NCBI GenBank assembly: GCA_013416795.1
Contig: RQSC01000005.1
Location: 207,393-228,666 of the forward strand
Source: Prasinococcaceae sp. CCMP 1430
Taxonomy: Eukaryota; Plantae; Prasinodermophyta
DNA: 21,274 nucleotides
Direction of reading: 5' to 3'
The notes below the pieces were generated by a model. It was not told the DNA's origin. It ran no database searches and worked only from the letters and a program-made list of their open reading frames with translations. Made by a program: the position numbers and the translations under genes. This document shows, in pieces, positions 1,089-20,778 of the stretch. Each line of letters opens with the position of its first letter. Position 1 is the first letter of the stretch.

Positions 1089-2069
1089 CTACGCGGCGCG
1101 GTACAAGGGGTTGACGCCCTCGGGCACCATCGGCGCCGTGTTGATCTCCGCGAGCTGCTCCGGCGTGGCGACGTCGGCGTGCAACGGGTTGACGGAGACT
1201 GACTCCACAGCGTCGTCGACGTCGAGGAGGGGCTCGTACGCGGAGGCCGCGGCGACCGGGGGCAGGGGCTGCGGCGTCGTCCTCCGCACGTGCTTGCACG
1301 CGCAGTACGCGAGCGAGCAGAACGTGAGCAGGCTCACCGCAACAAACGCGAGGAAGCACGCGGGCGGGTGGCGGTGAGGGCCCCGAGGGCCGTCGGGGTG
1401 GCGGGGATGAGGGCCGTCGAAGCGCGGGTCGAACTCGCGCGCCGTCCAAGGCGGCTCCTCCCACGGGGGCACCTCGAAGTCGCGCACGCCGAGGTCGGGC
1501 ATCTGTGCGCGCAGCCCCTCCATCCTTGCGGCCGCGGCGTCCTGCTCGCCGCCGAACAGCAGGTCGAAGATGCCCATTGGCGGCACCTCGGGGATGACCA
1601 TATCGGCGTCGCCATCGCGGCCCTCGTGGCAGCCACTCTTCTTGGTCCCGGGGACGAACGGCCTGTACACGGGGCGCGGGAGCACGAGGTCGAGCAGCAT
1701 GCCCACGTCGAGCATGGCACCCAGAGCGTCCTCCTCAGAGTCGCTCACGACGGTGACGTCGACGCCCGAGTCGTCAAAGGAGATATCCACGACGGCCTGC
1801 GCGGCGCCCGGGCACGAGCACTCGGCCGAGACGAGCTGCCCGTCCTCGCCGGTGACGCAGGTGGCCTGCGCCGCGATGGCGCCCGCCGCGATGCACTCGG
1901 CAGAGCACTGCGCACGCACCGCCTCGCACACGTCCATTGGGATCTCCTCCACCTCGACGAGTTCCTCGACAAGGTCCTCGACGCCCTCCCCGAGCGCCGC
2001 CGCACCGCCAACGGCCGCGAGCGCCACCGCGGCAACGCAGAGCGCCGCGCGCGCGCGGCGCGCCGCCAT
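1089..2069 (-). CDS. Orphan type-I membrane protein, 326 aa, intronless: signal peptide, 6-Cys module, acidic/Pro-His stalk, TM helix, tail with YEPLL and two VNPL(H/Y) motifs
   Basis: The ATG at 2069 opens MAARRARAALCVAAVALAAVGGAAA (signal peptide). TM helix CFLAFVAVSLLTFCSLAYCAC is followed by basic KHVRR. TAG stop at 1089-1091. Confidence 0.8.
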   Translation of the reverse strand: MAARRARAALCVAAVALAAVGGAAALGEGVEDLVEELVEVEEIPMDVCEAVRAQCSAECIAAGAIAAQATCVTGEDGQLVSAECSCPGAAQAVVDISFDDSGVDVTVVSDSEEDALGAMLDVGMLLDLVLPRPVYRPFVPGTKKSGCHEGRDGDADMVIPEVPPMGIFDLLFGGEQDAAAARMEGLRAQMPDLGVRDFEVPPWEEPPWTAREFDPRFDGPHPRHPDGPRGPHRHPPACFLAFVAVSLLTFCSLAYCACKHVRRTTPQPLPPVAAASAYEPLLDVDDAVESVSVNPLHADVATPEQLAEINTAPMVPEGVNPLYRAA

Positions 2070-2183: not shown

Positions 2184-2706
2184 NNNNNNNNNNNNNNNNN
2201 NNNNNNNNNNNNNNNNNNNNNNNNNNNNNNNNNNNNNNNNNNNNNNNNNNNNNNNNNNNNNNNNNNNNNNNNNNNNNNNNNNNNNNNNNNNNNNNNNNNN
2301 NNNNNNNNNNNNNNNNNNNNNNNNNNNNNNNNNNNNNNNNNNNNNNNNNNNNNNNNNNNNNNNNNNNNNNNNNNNNNNNNNNNNNNNNNNNNNNNNNNNN
2401 NNNNNNNNNNNNNNNNNNNNNNNNNNNNNNNNNNNNNNNNNNNNNNNNNNNNNNNNNNNNNNNNNNNNNNNNNNNNNNNNNNNNNNNNNNNNNNNNNNNN
2501 NNNNNNNNNNNNNNNNNNNNNNNNNNNNNNNNNNNNNNNNNNNNNNNNNNNNNNNNNNNNNNNNNNNNNNNNNNNNNNNNNNNNNNNNNNNNNNNNNNNN
2601 NNNNNNNNNNNNNNNNNNNNNNNNNNNNNNNNNNNNNNNNNNNNNNNNNNNNNNNNNNNNNNNNNNNNNNNNNNNNNNNNNNNNNNNNNNNNNNNNNNNN
2701 NNNNNN
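2184..2706. other. Assembly gap (523 N)
   Basis: Run of N between two divergently transcribed genes. Confidence 1.
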
Positions 2707-2742
<36 letters not shown>

Positions 2743-2830
2743 GCACGCACACACACACACACGCACGCACGCACGCACACATGCGCACTCGCGCGCACAC
2801 ACACACACACACACATGCGCACTCGCGCAC
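2707..2830. repeat. (CA)n/(GCAC)n compound microsatellite
   Basis: Pure AC run from 2707, then mixed ACGC/AC tracts with a duplicated ACACATGCGCACTCGCGC motif. It abuts the gap. Confidence 0.95.
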
Positions 2831-3078
2831 GGTGCGCAGCACTGGCACTGGCACCTGCCCGAGCTCGCTACGGTAGATCTAGAGACGAACCTGAATCTAC
2901 CTGGAGAGCCCCAACTGTGGCGGCTCGCGCGATCGCAAACGCGTCCGCAAAAATGGCGGCTGGCGGGCGTCGCGCCACACCTCCCCGCTCTGACCCCCGG
3001 CGCCTGCCGCGCCCCGCCCGCGCGGCTTGCGGTGGCGCGTGGCGCCTTCGAGCTCCTGCACCGAGACTTCGCCGGCCG

Positions 3079-4794
3079 ATGACGAGGGCGCGCGGCGCCC
3101 CCGCCGCGGCGGGCCCGCTGCCCCCGCTCCTGTTGGCCGCGGCCGCGTTGGCCGTCGCGTTGCCGGTAGGGTTGGCGCAGGGCTCCGAGTCGGCCAACGT
3201 CAGCGCGATCGCGGGCGAGGACCTCGAGCCCTCGGCGGTGGTCTGGACGCCGCGCGCGCCGCTGCCGGCGCCGCTGTCGGACTTCTCGGCGACGCGCGTC
3301 CGCGCGCGGAGCGCCTCGCCGTACTCTACTACCGCCGCAGATGCGGGCAGCGGCGGCGACTACCTGATCGCCATTGTCGGCGGCTGCGACGGCGACCAGT
3401 CGCTCGTGTGCGAGGACGAGGATGCCCAGGTGGGGTGCTTCTTCGTGTGCCCGCACGCGACGGACGCCGTAGCGCTCTACCATCCTGCAATGGACAAGTA
3501 TTTCGTGTCCGAGTCGGAGACAGCGCCCGACAGCGGCACGAACGACACGGCGATGTCGGGCGCTGAGGGCCAAAACGGCAGTAGCGACGATGGTACTGCG
3601 GTGGGCGCGAGCGCCGGTACGGTCGCGCGCGCTCCGGTGGCGCGGCTGAGGCACGCCGCCGCCGCCGTGCTTGGCGGCGAGTTGCTCGTCGTTGCGGGAG
3701 GGCGCACCGCCGACACCGATGAGCTCATCACCGCGATCGACGTCTTCAACGCGAGCAGCGGCACGTGGGCGGAGCCCTCGCCCATCACCAACTGGACGGG
3801 TGCCACGAGCGATCTTGGCATGTTCGCACTGGACGACTGGCCCGCGCCCGGCGCAGCGACTGCCGTCGCGCTCGCTGGGTACGACGCCGGCTACGAGGCG
3901 CTCCCTGACGCACAGGAGTTCGTGCTGGCGCCCGCGTCGGACCTGTCCTCCGTGCTGCCGCCAGGCACCGAGGTCCTGGCGACCTCGGAGCCCTTCACAG
4001 TCGGCGGCGCGGGCGCCCCCGCGCTGGCGCTCGCGTGGGTTCGCATGCCAGCGCAAGCGGGTGGCGTGCCGGACCTCCCCGACGCCGGGCGCGGCGACAT
4101 CACGGTCGCTCAGGCGCCGCCCGTCGAGGAGGGCGTCCAAGCGATGGCAGTGGCCATCGGTGGCTACGTGGCGGGCGATTTCTGCAGCCCCGTCGCGACC
4201 GTGGACGCATTTGTGCCCTTTCCGACCGTGGCGGCGGCGACGAGCTCCGCAGGTGTTTGGGTATCGCTGCCCCCGCTCACGCACCCGCGTGCCGACGCCG
4301 CCGCCGGATGGGCGGACGGACGGCTGTTTGTCGCGGGCGGCGAAGGGACGCGCGAGTGCGCCGAGTTCTCGCTCGCGACCGATCACGTCGAGGAGTGGAC
4401 GCCACCAGTCGACTCCTTGCTCAACGCGAGCACCGCGTCGCTAGCCGCGTGGCGCGACGCGGGCGACTTTCCGGGCGAGCGCTTCCGATTCGCTGGCGCC
4501 AGCACGGAGAGCGCTCTGTTCTTGTTCGGCGGGCAAGCCAAGTTCGATGAGGCCTCGGGGACGTATCCACTCACCGAGGATGTTGTGGAGTTCCAAGAGG
4601 GATGCCCGTCCTTGCCGGGCAGCGGCGACGTCAACGGCGACTCTCAGGTGGACCTGACGGATCTCCAGGAGGCAGCCAAGCACGTGGCAAGCGCGCTTAT
4701 CCCCAAATGCGTCCTATTCGCCGCAGATCTCGACGCGAACGGCGTGCTCGATGCTGCTGATCTCGCGATGCTGCAGGTCATCGTGCAAGAATGA
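3079..4794 (+). CDS. Secreted six-bladed Kelch beta-propeller protein with a C-terminal dockerin-like domain, 571 aa (alternative in-frame ATG at 2953)
   Basis: Signal peptide ...LLLAAAALAVALPVGLA. Kelch repeats with GG/AG turns and W markers (IAIVGGC, LVVAGGR, VALAGY, VAIGGY, LFVAGGE, LFLFGGQ). C-terminal GDVNGDSQVDLTD...ADLDANGVLDAAD. TGA stop at 4792-4794. Confidence 0.85.
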   Translation: MTRARGAPAAAGPLPPLLLAAAALAVALPVGLAQGSESANVSAIAGEDLEPSAVVWTPRAPLPAPLSDFSATRVRARSASPYSTTAADAGSGGDYLIAIVGGCDGDQSLVCEDEDAQVGCFFVCPHATDAVALYHPAMDKYFVSESETAPDSGTNDTAMSGAEGQNGSSDDGTAVGASAGTVARAPVARLRHAAAAVLGGELLVVAGGRTADTDELITAIDVFNASSGTWAEPSPITNWTGATSDLGMFALDDWPAPGAATAVALAGYDAGYEALPDAQEFVLAPASDLSSVLPPGTEVLATSEPFTVGGAGAPALALAWVRMPAQAGGVPDLPDAGRGDITVAQAPPVEEGVQAMAVAIGGYVAGDFCSPVATVDAFVPFPTVAAATSSAGVWVSLPPLTHPRADAAAGWADGRLFVAGGEGTRECAEFSLATDHVEEWTPPVDSLLNASTASLAAWRDAGDFPGERFRFAGASTESALFLFGGQAKFDEASGTYPLTEDVVEFQEGCPSLPGSGDVNGDSQVDLTDLQEAAKHVASALIPKCVLFAADLDANGVLDAADLAMLQVIVQE

Positions 4795-4973
4795 GCTCTG
4801 TTGAGTCAAGGCCAACGTGAAGCGTGCAAGCGGGGTGCTCTCTCAATCACGACGCAGCGTGTGTCCCACACGCGGGCGCCTCTACGTGTTGGCAGCCAGC
4901 TCAACCGATGCAAGCTGCGGCTGGCGAGGGGACCTAAGAGATACGGCCCACGTCGACGCTACAACTACAGTAC

Positions 4974-4997
4974 TGTAATGAAAGCCGTACAATTACA
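4974..4997. promoter_or_regulatory. Pair of convergent TGTAA poly(A) signals (4974-4978 on +, 4993-4997 on -)
   Basis: Each motif lies downstream of the stop of the gene on its own strand (4794 on +, 5018 on -). Confidence 0.6.
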
Positions 4998-5017: not shown

Positions 5018-5568
5018 TTACTGTCGCTTCAAGTTGCGGCCAGCGCCCACTGCGTCGCGCCCACCACCCACTGCCTCGTTGACGTACTGCCCTGATACAA
5101 ATGCCGCCCAGAACAATCCCGCTTGCGCGGTTGGCGATGCCGCAGCTTGCACAAGGGCAGGCCCGGGACAAGCCCCGAGGAGCCCCCAACCCACGCCAAA
5201 CACCGCCGCACCCGCCAACAGGCGCGCGCTGACGTCGCCATTGTCGCCTGCGGTCGGGCCAAACTTGACCTCGTACGCGCCACCGCAGGTAGAGCCACTG
5301 CACGCCCGCCCCGCGCGCTGGTTTCGCATGATGATGGCGAAGGCCGGCGTGATGATGGCGAGCGCACCACCCATGACGAACATGAGGCTCGCATCGAAGT
5401 GAGGGGTGAGGGGCGAAAGGAAGCCAATGACCTGCGTGGGGTGGGTGGGTGAGAGCACTCCGAGTCAACGGATCGCAAGCCGGCGGGCGTCTGCGAATGA
5501 CACGCATCGGAACCATGCACCCGCGCGCTCCGGGTGCTGCGCGCGCTCACCTTGCTAGGATTCGGCAT
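5018..5568 (-). CDS. YeeE/YedE (Sulf_transp/DUF6691-type) sulfur-compound transporter, C-terminal half only, 143 aa; exons 5568-5551 and 5431-5018
   Basis: The spliced join gives MPNPSK|VIGFL..FDASLMFVMGGAL and LLAGAAVFGVGWGLLGACPGPALV, both hallmark motifs. Intron 5550-5432 has AAG|GTGAGC, a GTTGAC branch and a C-rich CAG acceptor. TAA stop, then TGTAA about 20 nt downstream. Confidence 0.75.
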
Positions 5569-17732: not shown

Positions 17733-20297
17733 TCAAGCGCGCGTGTACACGTACACGTAGCCAAGGCCCAGCGGGGGGCTCTGGCTCTTCATGACTTTGT
17801 TGTCGTTCAGGAGCGTGTAAGAGCCGTCGGGCTCCCTCCTGTGTGCCACGTAATGGCCGGCGTGCACGGACGACCCCATGTGGGAGCACATCGCGCGCAG
17901 GCGGTACTTGCCAGCGCCATCGGTGAGAGCACGTGCCGGCGCGCTGCTGGCGGCAGCATCAGCGCCGCCGTCGATATCCATTGACACGGCGCCATTGAAG
18001 AGCGCGTCCGCCGCGCGCTCGATGTTGTTGTCGCACTGCTCGAGGGCACGCCTCGCGAGTGGCGCATCGAATCCCATCGCCACAAGCATCTCGACAGACT
18101 CCGCTGGTGGCTCCGGCTTGCCGCCGCCACCTGCACCTGCCGGCGCGGCCGGCACGATGGGGGCGTCAATGTCAGGGTCGTCCATGTGCTCGAGCAGCCA
18201 ATTCATCGCCATGTCCGCGTTTGAGTTCTGTGTGGCGAGCGCAGCCTTCTGGCAGCGAATCTCAGGGAAGCCCATCGACGCCAGCTGTGCGACGATGGAG
18301 GGGTCTGCCTGCGGAGCCGCGGCCGCGGCGGGCGCCGCTTCAAACGCGACAGCGTCGGCCGAGCCTTCCTCTGGCAGCGCCTCCTCTCCCGGCCGGACCC
18401 CTCCGTCGCCGGGCGAGCGCACGCCCAGCGTGCCGAGATCGAGCTCCTCCGGCACGTCCAGCTCCACATCTAGCTTGGTGGGCACCCAGTTGTCCCCCAC
18501 CACGAACTTCTTCACGTGAATCACCAGCGTGTCTGGGTACGAGAGCATGCTCATGGACTTGAGCGCCACCCCACGCTTGCCCGTGGCGGTGCTCATGAAG
18601 CCGTCGACGCGCTCTTGTCCTACCATGGCCGCGAGGCATGCGGTCAGCGGCACCTTGGGCCGCACGACCGTCGCCGCGTCGACCTTCTGGCCCGCCGCCT
18701 CGACGGCAGCCTTGTGCTCCTCGAAGGCGGCAACCTCCGCCTTGTTTACGGCCGCCTCGAGCGGCACCGGCACGCTGAGGGCATTCTCCTCACGCGAGAC
18801 GTACCGCACCTTGCCCGACGCCTCGCACTGCGTGCGCTCTTCGACCTTGAACGAAGACGCCAAGGACGGGTCGGTGGCCGTGGTTGCCTGTGCGCCGCTG
18901 CTTGAAGCACGCGCGTGCTCGCCGCGCTCGACGAGCTGCAAGAGCCACTGGTAGAACTCGAAGGCGTCCTGTTGACGCCCCGTGCTGAACTCGGCATGCC
19001 CAGCGCCAGCAAAATTTTTGAATGCCCTCGGGGAGACACCGTTGCCGCCCGGCCCGTCGCCGCCCTCGGCGCCCGCAGTGCCCTCCGCGGGGGGCTTAGA
19101 ATAGTCGCCTGACAGCAGCCCATGGCCGAGCTTGCACATTTGAAGTGCAAAGTCGGCGGACGGGTCGGAGGGCGCCGCCTCGAAGGCTGCGCGCAGCGCC
19201 TCCGCGGAGCCGTATCTGGTCGCGAAGGCTTCGGTGGCGAACATCGCCTGGATCACCGATGCCATGTAGCACGAGTTGCCCAGATTCTTCATGCCTGTGA
19301 AGCCCGGGCCGTACAGCGGCTCGAGGACCTTGCCCTCCTCGGTGAGCTTGGAGAAGTCGAATGCAACATTCATGTCAAGCTCCAGCTCCGCCATGGACTT
19401 ATCCGTCTTCGTCATCTGCATGACGTCGATGCCCCAGTGCGCGAGGTGCTTGGCGAGGTGCGGGTCCTCGACGAGATCGTTTTCGTCCGGTGCGTACGAG
19501 AACACGTCCGCGCCCTCCGGCGTGATCGTACCGAGCTTGACTGCCAGCGGGTACTTGCTCCCAGTGGCCTCGTAGTGCGTGAGTGCCGCACCAGTACCAC
19601 CCGAGCCATCCCAGTTACGTCGCCCGCTGCCGATGTGGCCCGTGCTAAGGTTGAGCCACAGATTCTCGGTCATGCCCGACTCTTCGCACTTCCACGTTGT
19701 CGGGTCAGGCGAAATCTTGACGCCGTTGTCCAGCTGCTCCAGGCTCTCCGCATACTTGGACACCTTGCGCTCTTCGTCGGCGACGAAGGCGTCGACCGCG
19801 GCGGTGCGCTCGGCGCCCGCCGCGGCCAGCACGCCGTTGGCCGCCTCAATCACGCGCTCAGGCAGCGCCGCGTTTGGGAAGGGCACCTCCTCGAACTCTG
19901 GCAGCACGACGACAGCGTAGCTCTCCTCATAGTCGTCCTCCCCCGGCCCAGTGCCCCCGCCAAAGCCGCCGTCCACCCCCACGCCGAGCACGGTGGGCGA
20001 TGGAGCGGGCTTCTTCTGCAGCGGCTGGCCGTCCGAGGCGCGCGTGTCGTCACCGGCGTCGTCCTTCTTTTCCTTGAGCGTGCGCGTGATGCGCAGGTAC
20101 ACCGGGTTGCCCGTTTTGGCGAGGTTCGCCTCGACGTAGCGCCGCCCGAATGCCACGTGCGACGCCAGGTCCACGAAGAGCCCACCGGGGGACTCGGCAT
20201 CGTCGAACGAGAGCGCGCACTCCTGCTTGTACACGCGTGCCCCCGCCGCAGGGATGCGCACGCGCTCCATGAGCAGCGGCCCGCGGAGCCGATCCAT
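17733..20297 (-). CDS. UBP14: Ubiquitin C-terminal hydrolase USP5/UBP14 (isopeptidase T), 854 aa, intronless
   Basis: VYKQEC..SFD, ZnF-UBP-type LWLNL..G..G.GR..WDGSGG..YPLAVKLGTIT, Cys box GMKNLGNSCY, QQDAFEF, two UBA domains (MGFP..CQKA; MGF..ARRAL) and His box HMGSSVHAGHYVAH. ATG at 20297. Confidence 0.96.
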   Translation of the reverse strand: MDRLRGPLLMERVRIPAAGARVYKQECALSFDDAESPGGLFVDLASHVAFGRRYVEANLAKTGNPVYLRITRTLKEKKDDAGDDTRASDGQPLQKKPAPSPTVLGVGVDGGFGGGTGPGEDDYEESYAVVVLPEFEEVPFPNAALPERVIEAANGVLAAAGAERTAAVDAFVADEERKVSKYAESLEQLDNGVKISPDPTTWKCEESGMTENLWLNLSTGHIGSGRRNWDGSGGTGAALTHYEATGSKYPLAVKLGTITPEGADVFSYAPDENDLVEDPHLAKHLAHWGIDVMQMTKTDKSMAELELDMNVAFDFSKLTEEGKVLEPLYGPGFTGMKNLGNSCYMASVIQAMFATEAFATRYGSAEALRAAFEAAPSDPSADFALQMCKLGHGLLSGDYSKPPAEGTAGAEGGDGPGGNGVSPRAFKNFAGAGHAEFSTGRQQDAFEFYQWLLQLVERGEHARASSSGAQATTATDPSLASSFKVEERTQCEASGKVRYVSREENALSVPVPLEAAVNKAEVAAFEEHKAAVEAAGQKVDAATVVRPKVPLTACLAAMVGQERVDGFMSTATGKRGVALKSMSMLSYPDTLVIHVKKFVVGDNWVPTKLDVELDVPEELDLGTLGVRSPGDGGVRPGEEALPEEGSADAVAFEAAPAAAAAPQADPSIVAQLASMGFPEIRCQKAALATQNSNADMAMNWLLEHMDDPDIDAPIVPAAPAGAGGGGKPEPPAESVEMLVAMGFDAPLARRALEQCDNNIERAADALFNGAVSMDIDGGADAAASSAPARALTDGAGKYRLRAMCSHMGSSVHAGHYVAHRREPDGSYTLLNDNKVMKSQSPPLGLGYVYVYTRA

Positions 20298-20778
20298 ATT
20301 CCCCTGCCCCCCGCGCCCTCCCTCCCCCGTGCGACGCCGAAAATGCCGGCTCGGGGCGGTAGCTGTTGGGGTGGAAGGGCGATCGGCGCCGCAGCCTCGC
20401 CTGTCGCAACCCCCACGCCTCCCCACGCCCCTCTTCGCACTCCCGCCCCTTCCCCCAGCCCTCCCGCCGCCGCGCGGCGCCGCACCGCGCGTTGAGTGTG
20501 TGGCGCGCGCGGCAAACAGATCCGCCTGCCATCAAATCGCACCGCGCGAATGTCACCCCCACCTGAGAGTACAAAAAGTCGAAAATGATCAGCATTACCC
20601 ACGGGCGATTACAATCACCGCACCGTTTTGCTCTGGTCGGTGCGCATCCGAAGCGACCTTACTGTACTTCCCCGGCGTCGCCGCGGCTGTTGGGCGCGCG
20701 GCCACTGCGCGTTGGCGGGCGCACACCGCGCGCGCTCTGTGGTGCGCCTCCTGCGACAGCAGGGGGGCGCCAGCCCCC

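What the first reader, a model, noticed from the sequence alone, without database searches (positions are those of the whole stretch)
4624..4791. Bacterial cellulosome-type dockerin on a secreted algal Kelch propeller
Seen: duplicated Ca-binding loop-helix repeats D-V-N-G-D-S-Q-V-D-L-T-D and D-L-D-A-N-G-V-L-D-A-A-D. Both have D/N at positions 1, 3, 5, 9 and 12, sit at the extreme C-terminus and follow a short linker. Known: this is the type-I dockerin consensus. Dockerins attach enzymes to cohesin scaffolds in anaerobic bacteria and are rare in eukaryotes. Positions 10-11 (LT versus AA) are the specificity residues and are asymmetric here. Inference: the alga may assemble extracellular complexes through a cohesin-dockerin-like system, or bind bacterial cohesins. 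The gene is intronless, which is compatible with, but not proof of, horizontal acquisition.
Basis: partly seen in the sequence, partly recalled or inferred. Interest (0 to 1): 0.72.

Follow-up and report, generated by a model that had tools for sequence, protein, structure and literature searches.

The report
Algal surface Kelch protein with dockerin
A marine green picoalga (probably Prasinoderma coloniale) expresses its own gene for a secreted six-bladed Kelch protein in which the membrane anchor found in almost all its relatives is replaced by a calcium-binding dockerin module of the bacterial kind, so the alga may plug this protein onto its surface; the binding partner has not been tested.

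Summary
Window 4624-4791 encodes the last 56 residues of a 571-aa protein (CDS 3079-4794, + strand). They score as Pfam Dockerin_1 (36 bits, cut-off 22.9). All EF-hand models fall below their cut-offs. Solved cellulosomal dockerins are the best PDB matches.

The gene is native, not a recent bacterial import:
- It has the genome's ~70% GC and sits among ordinary eukaryotic genes.
- It is colinear with an 1,865-nt contig from a probable transcriptome run.
- An orthologue in a related alga has the same architecture, cut by three GTGCGT...AG introns. One intron lies exactly at the propeller/dockerin boundary.
- The dockerin is also kept in a Prasinoderma singulare orthologue (dN/dS about 0.24).
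- A distant MMETSP protein has the same Kelch-dockerin layout.

The propeller belongs to an algal family of signal peptide plus Kelch. Of 72 relatives without a dockerin, 69 end in a transmembrane or hydrophobic C-terminal anchor. So the dockerin stands where the anchor normally is.

My best reading is a non-covalent, Ca-dependent surface tether. The cohesin partner could not be tested here. The horizontal-transfer hint is not supported.

This scan found the same 1,716-nt gene before on another piece of DNA (s1-377779). It also noted cohesin-fold proteins elsewhere in the genome. I did not check those.

The parts
3079..4794 (+). Intronless CDS of 571 aa plus stop: signal peptide, six-bladed Kelch propeller, Cys-containing linker and C-terminal dockerin module.
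   Evidence: The ORF is. Exactly this 571-aa product is on record, and 11 of the 15 listed members of its 20-member cluster are also 571 aa. The 13 aligned variants are 98-99% identical. A contig of run X15 is colinear over 3098-4959 with no gaps and no differences.
3079..3183 (+). Predicted signal peptide, residues 1-35: a basic N-terminus, a Leu/Ala-rich core and an A-Q-G end. The cleavage site is inferred.
   Evidence: The 12-residue hydropathy maximum is 2.83 within the first 35 residues. AF2 predicts a helix at 16-26 followed by disorder. The orthologue and most family members start with a similar hydrophobic segment. No signal-peptide predictor was available.
3232..4596 (+). Six-bladed Kelch beta-propeller, residues ~52-506, with long low-confidence loops at 153-176 and 383-387.
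   Evidence: Kelch_1 scores 23.9 bits against a cut-off of 20.1. The AF2 model built with an 83-row alignment has pLDDT mostly above 90 here. Foldseek top hits are six-bladed Kelch domains (NS1-BP, KLHL17, KLHL3, Keap1, LZTR1) at E down to 2.4e-16.
4597..4623 (+). Linker E-G-C-P-S-L-P-G-S containing Cys509 (nt 4603-4605).
   Evidence: The sequence is. A Cys lies just upstream of the dockerin in all four algal proteins. It is in the same E-G-C-P-S motif in three of them and slightly shifted in P0020. In the orthologue L002 a phase-0 intron lies right after the C-P-S codons.
4624..4791 (+). Dockerin module, residues 516-571. It comprises Ca loop 1 (4627-4662) and helix 1; an inter-repeat linker with a short helix and Cys544 (4708-4710); and Ca loop 2 (4726-4761) and helix 3.
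   Evidence: PF00404 scores 36.0 bits, E 7.8e-9. PDB matches are 8x39_A at 1e-8 and 2ccl_B at 1.9e-4. A profile of the four algal modules reaches 1.6e-15 and 1.3e-6 on the same chains. AF2 predicts helices at 526-536, 543-548 and 559-570, with pLDDT only 52-68. dN/dS against L002 is 0.24.
4795..4996 (+). Probable 3' UTR. The transcript contigs end at 4959 (X15) and 4996 (X16).
   Evidence: table 8. The DNA contig of X4 runs on through 5300, whereas these contigs stop. A convergent DUF6691 gene ends at 5018 on the minus strand.

Best explanation
The window carries a native, expressed, intronless nuclear gene of a Prasinoderma-type green picoalga. Its product enters the secretory pathway through an N-terminal signal peptide. 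It folds into a six-bladed Kelch propeller and ends in a roughly 56-residue module of the dockerin family: two Ca-binding loop-helix repeats joined by a short helical linker. The propeller belongs to an algal family whose other members are held at the cell surface by a C-terminal transmembrane helix or a hydrophobic, GPI-signal-like end. In the Prasinoderma lineage, and in one other sampled lineage, that anchor is replaced by the dockerin. I therefore infer that the dockerin does the anchor's job. It would tether the propeller non-covalently and Ca-dependently to a partner on the cell surface or in the wall, most plausibly a cohesin-fold module. Two cysteines conserved only in the algal versions (Cys509 just before the module and Cys544 between the repeats) probably form a disulfide that staples the small module for extracellular life. 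Shown here: domain identity, gene integrity, conservation, purifying selection and replacement of the anchor. Expression rests on contigs only. Inferred: secretion, Ca binding, the disulfide, tethering and the nature of the partner. What the propeller itself binds is unknown. By analogy with extracellular Kelch propellers such as attractin, it is a ligand-binding face, not a known enzyme.
For: Domain identity:
- Dockerin_1 scores above the gathering score and every EF-hand model scores below its own.
- The best PDB sequence matches are dockerins, including the C. thermocellum Xyn10B type I dockerin.
- The language-model neighbours are dockerin clusters, at a weak 0.84.

Native gene:
- GC is about 0.67-0.73, like the rest of the window. 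This matches the 69.8% published for P. coloniale.
- The neighbours are eukaryotic genes: WD40, His_Phos, MatE, a UBP with UBA domains, and glyoxalase.
- The orthologue on L002 has three introns with GTGCGT donors and AG acceptors. The last is a phase-0 intron at the propeller/dockerin boundary.

Expression:
- A contig from a transcriptome-sized run covers exactly 3098-4959 without a gap. Marine metatranscriptome contigs cover parts of the gene.

Conservation:
- The dockerin is 67% identical in L002 and 50% identical in the P. singulare cluster. UniRef names a member of that cluster 'Dockerin domain-containing protein'.
- It is also present in the distant protein P0020 (Dockerin_1 24.6 bits).
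- dN/dS is 0.24 for the dockerin and 0.17-0.27 for the propeller.

Anchor replacement:
- The exhaustive search gave 414 relatives.
- Of 72 aligned members without a dockerin, 29 have a TM helix plus tail and 40 have a hydrophobic C-terminal end. Three are marginal.
- Only the four dockerin members lack such an anchor.

Cysteines:
Against: - No cohesin or other partner was examined here. The rest of the genome was out of reach, and the scan's notes on cohesin-fold proteins are unchecked leads.
- The AF2 confidence for the dockerin is only 52-68, and its fold could not be searched on its own.
- Dockerin_1 and the EF-hand families belong to one Pfam clan (my own knowledge). EF-hand proteins appear from E = 5.7e-5 in the profile search, so the margin is real but not huge.
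- Many bacterial dockerin-like modules outside cellulosomes have no known cohesin (my own knowledge of the field, citing Peer et al. 2009, which the paper tool does not hold).
- In P. singulare, loop position 9 is T or G instead of D/N.
- The RNA status of run X15 is the tool's guess.
Confidence: 0.6

Rival explanations
1. The module is a dockerin-family Ca-binding pair that has no cohesin partner. It would stabilise the protein, or bind the wall directly, for example by Ca-bridging to acidic or sulfated polysaccharide, or it would drive self-association.
For: Dockerin_1 and the EF-hand families are one clan, and EF-hand models give weak hits. Dockerin-like modules are common in marine bacteria on proteins with no known cohesin, such as the multi-dockerin PKD and subtilase proteins P0110 and P0132. 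No partner was tested here.
Against: The module sits where the membrane anchor is in 69 of 72 relatives. This argues for an attachment role, although attachment to a polysaccharide would fit that as well. Scan notes report cohesin-fold surface proteins in this genome; these are untested.
Confidence: 0.25
2. The gene, or the whole contig, is a recent horizontal acquisition from bacteria or bacterial contamination.
For: The gene is intronless. The dockerin family is overwhelmingly bacterial, and all the nearest non-algal dockerins appear bacterial.
Against: The orthologue has three spliceosomal introns. The propeller's relatives include algal proteins from Pinguiococcus, Octactis and MMETSP transcripts. 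The neighbouring genes are eukaryotic and the GC matches the genome. No bacterial dockerin above about 46% identity was found in 1.84 billion representatives or in the metagenome scan.
Confidence: 0.03
3. The dockerin targets cohesins of associated bacteria. This would be cross-kingdom docking in the phycosphere, not docking onto an algal partner.
For: Nothing beyond the bacterial-type sequence.
Against: The module stands in for a self-anchoring device in a family of the cell's own surface proteins. It has been under purifying selection across Prasinoderma species. No bacterial cohesin partner is known or was tested.
Confidence: 0.04

Closest known systems
Bacterial type I dockerins of cellulosomal enzymes, such as the C. 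thermocellum Xyn10B dockerin (PDB 1ohz and 2ccl) and Pfam PF00404
   Same: Both have two roughly 22-residue repeats, each a 12-residue Ca loop with D/N at positions 1, 3, 5, 9 and 12 followed by a helix, joined by a short linker helix. Both are C-terminal and follow a short Pro/Ser/Gly linker on a secreted protein. The sequence match is E = 1.9e-4 for the single module and 1.3e-6 for the algal profile.
   Different: The host is a eukaryotic alga and the passenger is a Kelch propeller, not a glycoside hydrolase. The recognition positions 10-11 are L-T and A-A instead of the clostridial S-T pairs. Two cysteines specific to the algal versions flank the first repeat. The module lies on its own exon in a relative. 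No cohesin partner has been shown.
Non-cellulosomal dockerin-like modules of marine and environmental bacteria, such as P0110 (PKD plus 4 dockerins) and P0132 (8 dockerins plus a subtilase); also the double-dockerin serine protease in PDB 8x39
   Same: These are the best non-algal sequence matches, at 31-40% identity. They too are dockerins on non-cellulolytic passengers, and their partners are mostly unknown.
   Different: They are tandem multi-dockerin arrays in bacterial proteins. They lack the conserved Cys pair and have no Kelch domain.
Algal family of signal peptide plus six-bladed Kelch plus C-terminal TM or hydrophobic anchor, such as P0035 (Pinguiococcus pyrenoidosus) and P0045/P0185 (Octactis speculum)
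   Same: The propeller is homologous over its whole length, at 24-33% identity to the non-Prasinoderma members, and shares the conserved blade motifs. All have an N-terminal signal sequence and an extracellular topology.
   Different: Those members end in a membrane anchor, whereas this one ends in a dockerin.
Extracellular Kelch propellers of animals (attractin, MEGF8; Pfam Beta-prop_ATRN-LZTR1)
   Same: Both are Kelch propellers displayed on the outside of the cell. Of the 83 aligned sequences, 73 hit this Pfam model, with a best E of 1.6e-34.
   Different: Attractin is a large mosaic type I membrane protein. Orthology is not implied, and the window protein itself scores only 12 bits on that model.

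Membership tests
Dockerin (Pfam PF00404 Dockerin_1) | The profile HMM score is above the curated gathering threshold. | tested here: met
   36.0 bits on the tail and 29.8-30.7 bits on the whole protein, against a cut-off of 22.9.
Dockerin (Pfam PF00404 Dockerin_1) | Two tandem loop-helix repeats with Ca ligands (D/N) at loop positions 1, 3, 5, 9 and 12. | tested here: met
   Loop 1 is D517, N519, D521, D525, D528. Loop 2 is D550, D552, N554, D558, D561. Positions 1, 3, 5 and 12 are invariant or D/N in all four algal modules. Position 9 varies in P. singulare.
Dockerin (Pfam PF00404 Dockerin_1) | A three-helix dockerin fold. | tested here: inconclusive
   AF2 predicts three helices (526-536, 543-548, 559-570) but at pLDDT 52-68.
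Dockerin (Pfam PF00404 Dockerin_1) | Closer to dockerins than to canonical EF-hand pairs. | tested here: met
   The EF-hand_1, 5, 6 and 7 models score 11.5-17.5 bits against cut-offs of 25-30. The top 7 PDB hits of the algal profile are all dockerins, and the first EF-hand protein appears at 5.7e-5.
Cohesin-dockerin system (cellulosome-like assembly) | A cohesin module in the same organism that binds the dockerin Ca-dependently. | not testable with these tools
   Only this 21-kb window was readable. No Pfam Cohesin hit was found among the ten ORFs scanned here. Scan notes s1-393020, s1-396487 and s1-403942 report cohesin-fold proteins elsewhere, but I did not check them.
Cohesin-dockerin system (cellulosome-like assembly) | The passengers are polysaccharide-degrading enzymes. 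| tested here: not met
   The passenger is a Kelch propeller with no CAZyme domain. Li et al. 2020 found no cellulose-related enzymes in P. coloniale.
Type I dockerin (as opposed to type II or III) | Specificity for type I cohesins. The clostridial recognition pair is S-T at positions 10-11, and there is no X-module. | tested here: inconclusive
   There is no X-module, but positions 10-11 are L-T and A-A. Type is defined by the partner, which is unknown.
Kelch beta-propeller | Kelch repeat profile hits and a six-bladed propeller fold. | tested here: met
   Kelch_1 scores 23.9 bits against 20.1. The AF2 propeller has pLDDT above 90. Foldseek finds six-bladed Kelch domains at E = 2.4e-16, with target TM-scores up to 0.79.
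Algal surface Kelch family (signal peptide, Kelch, anchor) | Full-length homology of the propeller together with a C-terminal membrane anchor. | tested here: not met
   The homology is met. The anchor is absent and replaced by the dockerin. This protein is therefore a variant member of the family.

The most novel reading that the evidence does not exclude
Prasinoderma, and perhaps Prasinodermophyta as a whole, runs a native eukaryotic cohesin-dockerin display system. Several secreted proteins would carry bacterial-type dockerins and plug into membrane-anchored, cohesin-fold scaffold proteins: this Kelch propeller, plus a nearby metalloprotease and LamG and somatomedin-B proteins that other scan notes mention. 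Together they would build or decorate a cell wall whose chemistry is unknown. The dockerin would have been captured as an exon and swapped in for a membrane anchor.
Probability: 0.3. Interest if true: 0.8.

Novelty: new variant of a known kind. Interest (0 to 1): 0.55.

Why it matters
Cohesin-dockerin pairing is the textbook way that anaerobic bacteria assemble cellulosomes. In eukaryotes it is essentially unstudied, and I found no paper on dockerins in algae. Here a dockerin has taken the place of a membrane anchor in a conserved family of algal surface proteins. It sits on its own exon in a relative and is under purifying selection. This gives a concrete, testable case of a bacterial-type docking module working in a eukaryote. 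It also gives a handle on the surface architecture of Prasinoderma, an early-diverging green lineage whose thick wall has no known composition. If a partner is confirmed, the pair would also be a small, Ca-switchable, disulfide-stapled tag of eukaryotic origin.

Tried and rejected
- **Single-sequence AF2 of the whole protein.** It gave pLDDT 36 and was useless. It was replaced by a run with an alignment.
- **Word-index search restricted to the dockerin region.** It found only the protein's own cluster.
- **NCBIfam scan.** It gave nothing meaningful.
- **AU test of one origin for the Kelch-dockerin fusion, on all 77 rows.** It did not finish in three 300-s runs. A 36-row LG+G4 version gave p = 0.505, so one origin versus two is unresolved.
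- **Metagenome scan with the algal dockerin profile.** It returned only distant dockerins (27-46% identity), apparently bacterial. It found no further algal loci.
- **Reaching the region upstream of the window.** I tried through the glyoxalase gene, but no exact product is on record.
- **The divergent upstream membrane protein (1089-2069, minus strand) as a possible partner.** It has no Pfam, PDB or atlas match. Nothing supports this idea.
- **Peer et al. 2009 on non-cellulosomal dockerins.** The paper is not held, so what I say about it comes from a citing paper and from memory.
- **Li et al. 2020.** Neither the text nor the held supplements mention dockerin or cohesin.
- **Exons of the L002 orthologue.** I compared them one at a time, by reference.
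- One metagenome locus (L027) comes from a contig labelled as a human-gut metagenome. I took it to be bacterial and did not use it further.
Full report
**1. What is there**

The longest sense ORF over the finding runs from 2815 to 4794 on the + strand. I take the start codon to be the ATG at 3079, for four reasons:
- The residues after it form a typical signal sequence: a basic N-terminus, a Leu/Ala-rich core and an A-Q-G end.
- Exactly this 571-aa product is on record, and 11 of the 15 listed members of its 20-member cluster are also 571 aa. The 13 variants I aligned are 98-99% identical.
- The orthologue starts in the same way.
- Upstream of 3079 the ORF runs into a CA repeat and an assembly gap (Ns at 2184-2706).

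The finding's coordinates, 4624-4791, are residues 516-571.

**2. Is it a dockerin?**

- On the last 68 residues, Pfam Dockerin_1 scores 36.0 bits (E = 7.8e-9, gathering score 22.9). EF-hand_1, 5, 6 and 7 score 11.5-17.5 bits against cut-offs of 25-30.
- By sequence against the PDB, the best matches are a double-dockerin serine protease (8x39, 1e-8) and the C. thermocellum Xyn10B type I dockerin (2ccl_B, 1.9e-4; 1ohz_B).
- A profile of the four algal modules (A4) improves these to 1.6e-15 and 1.3e-6. Its seven best hits are all dockerins, and the first EF-hand protein appears at 5.7e-5.
- With an 83-row alignment, AF2 predicts three helices in the module (526-536, 543-548, 559-570), as in dockerins. 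The pLDDT is only 52-68, so I count the fold test as inconclusive.

That criterion is not met. 'Type I' cannot be asserted, because dockerin types are defined by their cohesin partner.

**3. The rest of the protein**

The same model gives a confident six-bladed propeller (pLDDT mostly above 90, pTM 0.80). Foldseek matches six-bladed Kelch domains (NS1-BP, KLHL17, KLHL3, KLHL20, Keap1, LZTR1) at E down to 2.4e-16. Six N-x-S/T sequons and the signal sequence fit a secreted glycoprotein. This is read from the sequence, and secretion is inferred.

**4. Native gene, and expressed**

- *Composition and neighbours.* GC over the gene is 0.67-0.73, like the rest of the window. It matches the 69.8% reported for Prasinoderma coloniale. 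Earlier scan notes name that organism. I could confirm this only indirectly: a cluster 57% identical contains a UniRef entry from Prasinoderma singulare. The neighbouring ORFs are ordinary eukaryotic genes: a WD40 protein, a histidine phosphatase, a MatE transporter, a UBP-type deubiquitinase with UBA domains, and a glyoxalase.
- *Transcript evidence.* An 1,865-nt contig from a transcriptome-sized 2015 run lies on 3098-4959 with no difference and no gap. Contigs of a second such run end at 4996. A DNA contig runs through the whole stretch that was laid. Marine metatranscriptome contigs cover parts of the gene. I read this as an unspliced mRNA with a 3' UTR of about 165-200 nt. The RNA label on those runs is the tool's guess.

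**5. Orthologues and introns**

- *The L002 orthologue.* A Logan contig from another run (L002, 67% GC) carries an orthologue that is 58-75% identical piece by piece. It has the same order of parts.
- *Its introns.* The reading frame is interrupted three times, at L002 1319-1553, 2213-2556 and 2773-3064. Each interval starts with GTGCGT and ends with AG, and each restores the frame (coordinates worked out from that output). The last intron is phase 0. It falls between ...G-C-P-S and M-P-G-S-G-D-V-N-G-D, so the dockerin is a separate exon there. I compared the exons one by one (P0019, P0002:16-238, P0021:1-76, P0031) and did not build the joined protein.
It more likely reflects intron loss here or intron gain in the relative.
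- *Conservation of the dockerin.* The module is 67% identical in L002. It is 50% identical in the P. singulare cluster, where UniRef already labels one member 'Dockerin domain-containing protein'. Nei-Gojobori dN/dS between the window and L002 is 0.24 for the dockerin exon and 0.17-0.27 for two propeller segments. dS is 0.6-1.0, close to saturation.

**6. The family, and what the dockerin replaces**

- *Relatives found.* An exhaustive phmmer search of 1.84 billion representatives found 414 relatives at E <= 1e-3. The few with names are algae: Pinguiococcus pyrenoidosus, Octactis speculum and MMETSP transcripts.
- *How they end.* In an alignment of 83 sequences, 75 hit Kelch_1 and only 8 hit Dockerin_1. 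Those 8 are the window protein, two P. singulare-cluster proteins, the L002 dockerin exon, P0020 and three bacterial dockerin pieces that I had added. Of the 72 full-length relatives without a dockerin, 29 have a transmembrane segment followed by a tail of at least 12 residues. A further 40 end in a hydrophobic stretch at the very C-terminus, like a GPI signal or a tail anchor. Three are marginal.
- *Inference.* The dockerin therefore occupies the position of the membrane anchor. This is the main basis for my functional inference that it is an alternative, non-covalent way of holding the propeller at the cell surface.
I had read that note before making the count, so the count is my test of its claim, not an independent discovery.

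**7. A second lineage**

P0020 is a 450-aa MMETSP transcript of unknown species, also found on JGI contig L003. It is only 31% identical over the full-length alignment (39% over the matched stretches), but it has the same Kelch-dockerin layout (Dockerin_1 24.6 bits). Its two repeats are nearly symmetrical. In a tree of the propeller it does not group with Prasinoderma, but no supported branch separates them. An AU test on 36 rows does not reject a single clade (p = 0.505). Whether the fusion arose once or twice is open.

**8. Features specific to the algal modules**

All four algal proteins have one Cys just before the module (the E-G-C-P-S motif in three of them, slightly shifted in P0020). 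All four have a second Cys in the inter-repeat linker (P-x-C). The three bacterial modules I aligned have neither. I infer a stapling disulfide.

**9. Origin of the module**

The nearest non-algal dockerins are multi-dockerin proteins, apparently bacterial, with PKD or subtilase domains (31-40% identity). A metagenome scan with the algal profile gave nothing closer than 46% over 47 residues. Language-model neighbours are bacterial dockerin clusters, with a weak score of 0.84. An ancient bacterial origin of the module is plausible from the family's distribution. No donor is visible, and a recent transfer is excluded.

**10. What is not shown**

No cohesin was examined. Nothing in this window resembles one. 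The divergently transcribed upstream gene (1089-2069, minus strand) is a type I membrane protein with no detectable relatives. The scan's notes report membrane-anchored proteins with cohesin-fold repeats, and several more dockerin-tagged proteins, on other pieces of this genome. These are untested leads, and I give them no weight as evidence.

**11. Literature**

No paper in the held library combines dockerin with Prasinoderma or with algal genomes. One paper states that dockerins are absent from green-algal cellulases. A 2017 paper cites Peer et al. 2009 and says Pfam cohesin domains in eukaryotes were thought to be restricted to choanoflagellates and sponges. Li et al. 2020 report that the wall composition of P. 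coloniale is unknown and that the usual wall-polysaccharide enzymes are missing.

**12. Verdict**

The module itself is a known kind and is already auto-annotated in a sister species. What I found undescribed in the literature is the context: anchor replacement in an algal surface-protein family, its own exon, a Cys staple, and purifying selection. I rate it a new variant of a known kind, with interest 0.55.

Noticed in passing
window 1089-2069 (-): A gene transcribed divergently from the Kelch-dockerin gene encodes a 326-aa protein with a signal-like N-terminus, an acidic ectodomain of about 210 residues, a TM segment at residues ~236-258 and a 68-aa tail. It has no Pfam, PDB or atlas relatives.
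   Followed up: partly
window 2184-2800: There is an assembly gap (Ns at 2184-2706), followed directly by a CA/GT dinucleotide repeat. Both lie in the shared upstream region of the two divergent genes, so the promoter region is incomplete in this assembly.
   Followed up: no
L002 1319-1553, 2213-2556, 2773-3064: The orthologue in a close relative (58-75% identical) has three introns, all with the donor GTGCGT, where the window gene has none. This is a clean case of intron presence/absence between close relatives.
   Followed up: partly
P0020 / L003 262-1614: A distant MMETSP protein of unknown species has the same Kelch-dockerin architecture, with two nearly symmetrical repeats (both loops are followed by V-L-D-V-V). 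Symmetry of this kind is associated with dual binding in bacterial dockerins (my own knowledge).
   Followed up: partly
window 5018-5458 (-): A DUF6691 ORF (61 bits) converges on the Kelch gene. Its stop codon at 5018 lies only about 20-60 nt from the apparent 3' ends of the Kelch transcript (4959-4996).
   Followed up: no
window 3114 to 4002 (run X17): One low-depth metatranscriptome contig joins 3114 to 4002 with 36 unrelated G/C-rich letters in between. It looks like a chimeric assembly of short GC-rich matches, not a splice.
   Followed up: no
window 17733-20426 (-): A long single ORF (897 aa) encodes a USP5-type deubiquitinase (zf-UBP_var, zf-UBP, UCH and two UBA domains). It appears to be intronless.
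   Followed up: no
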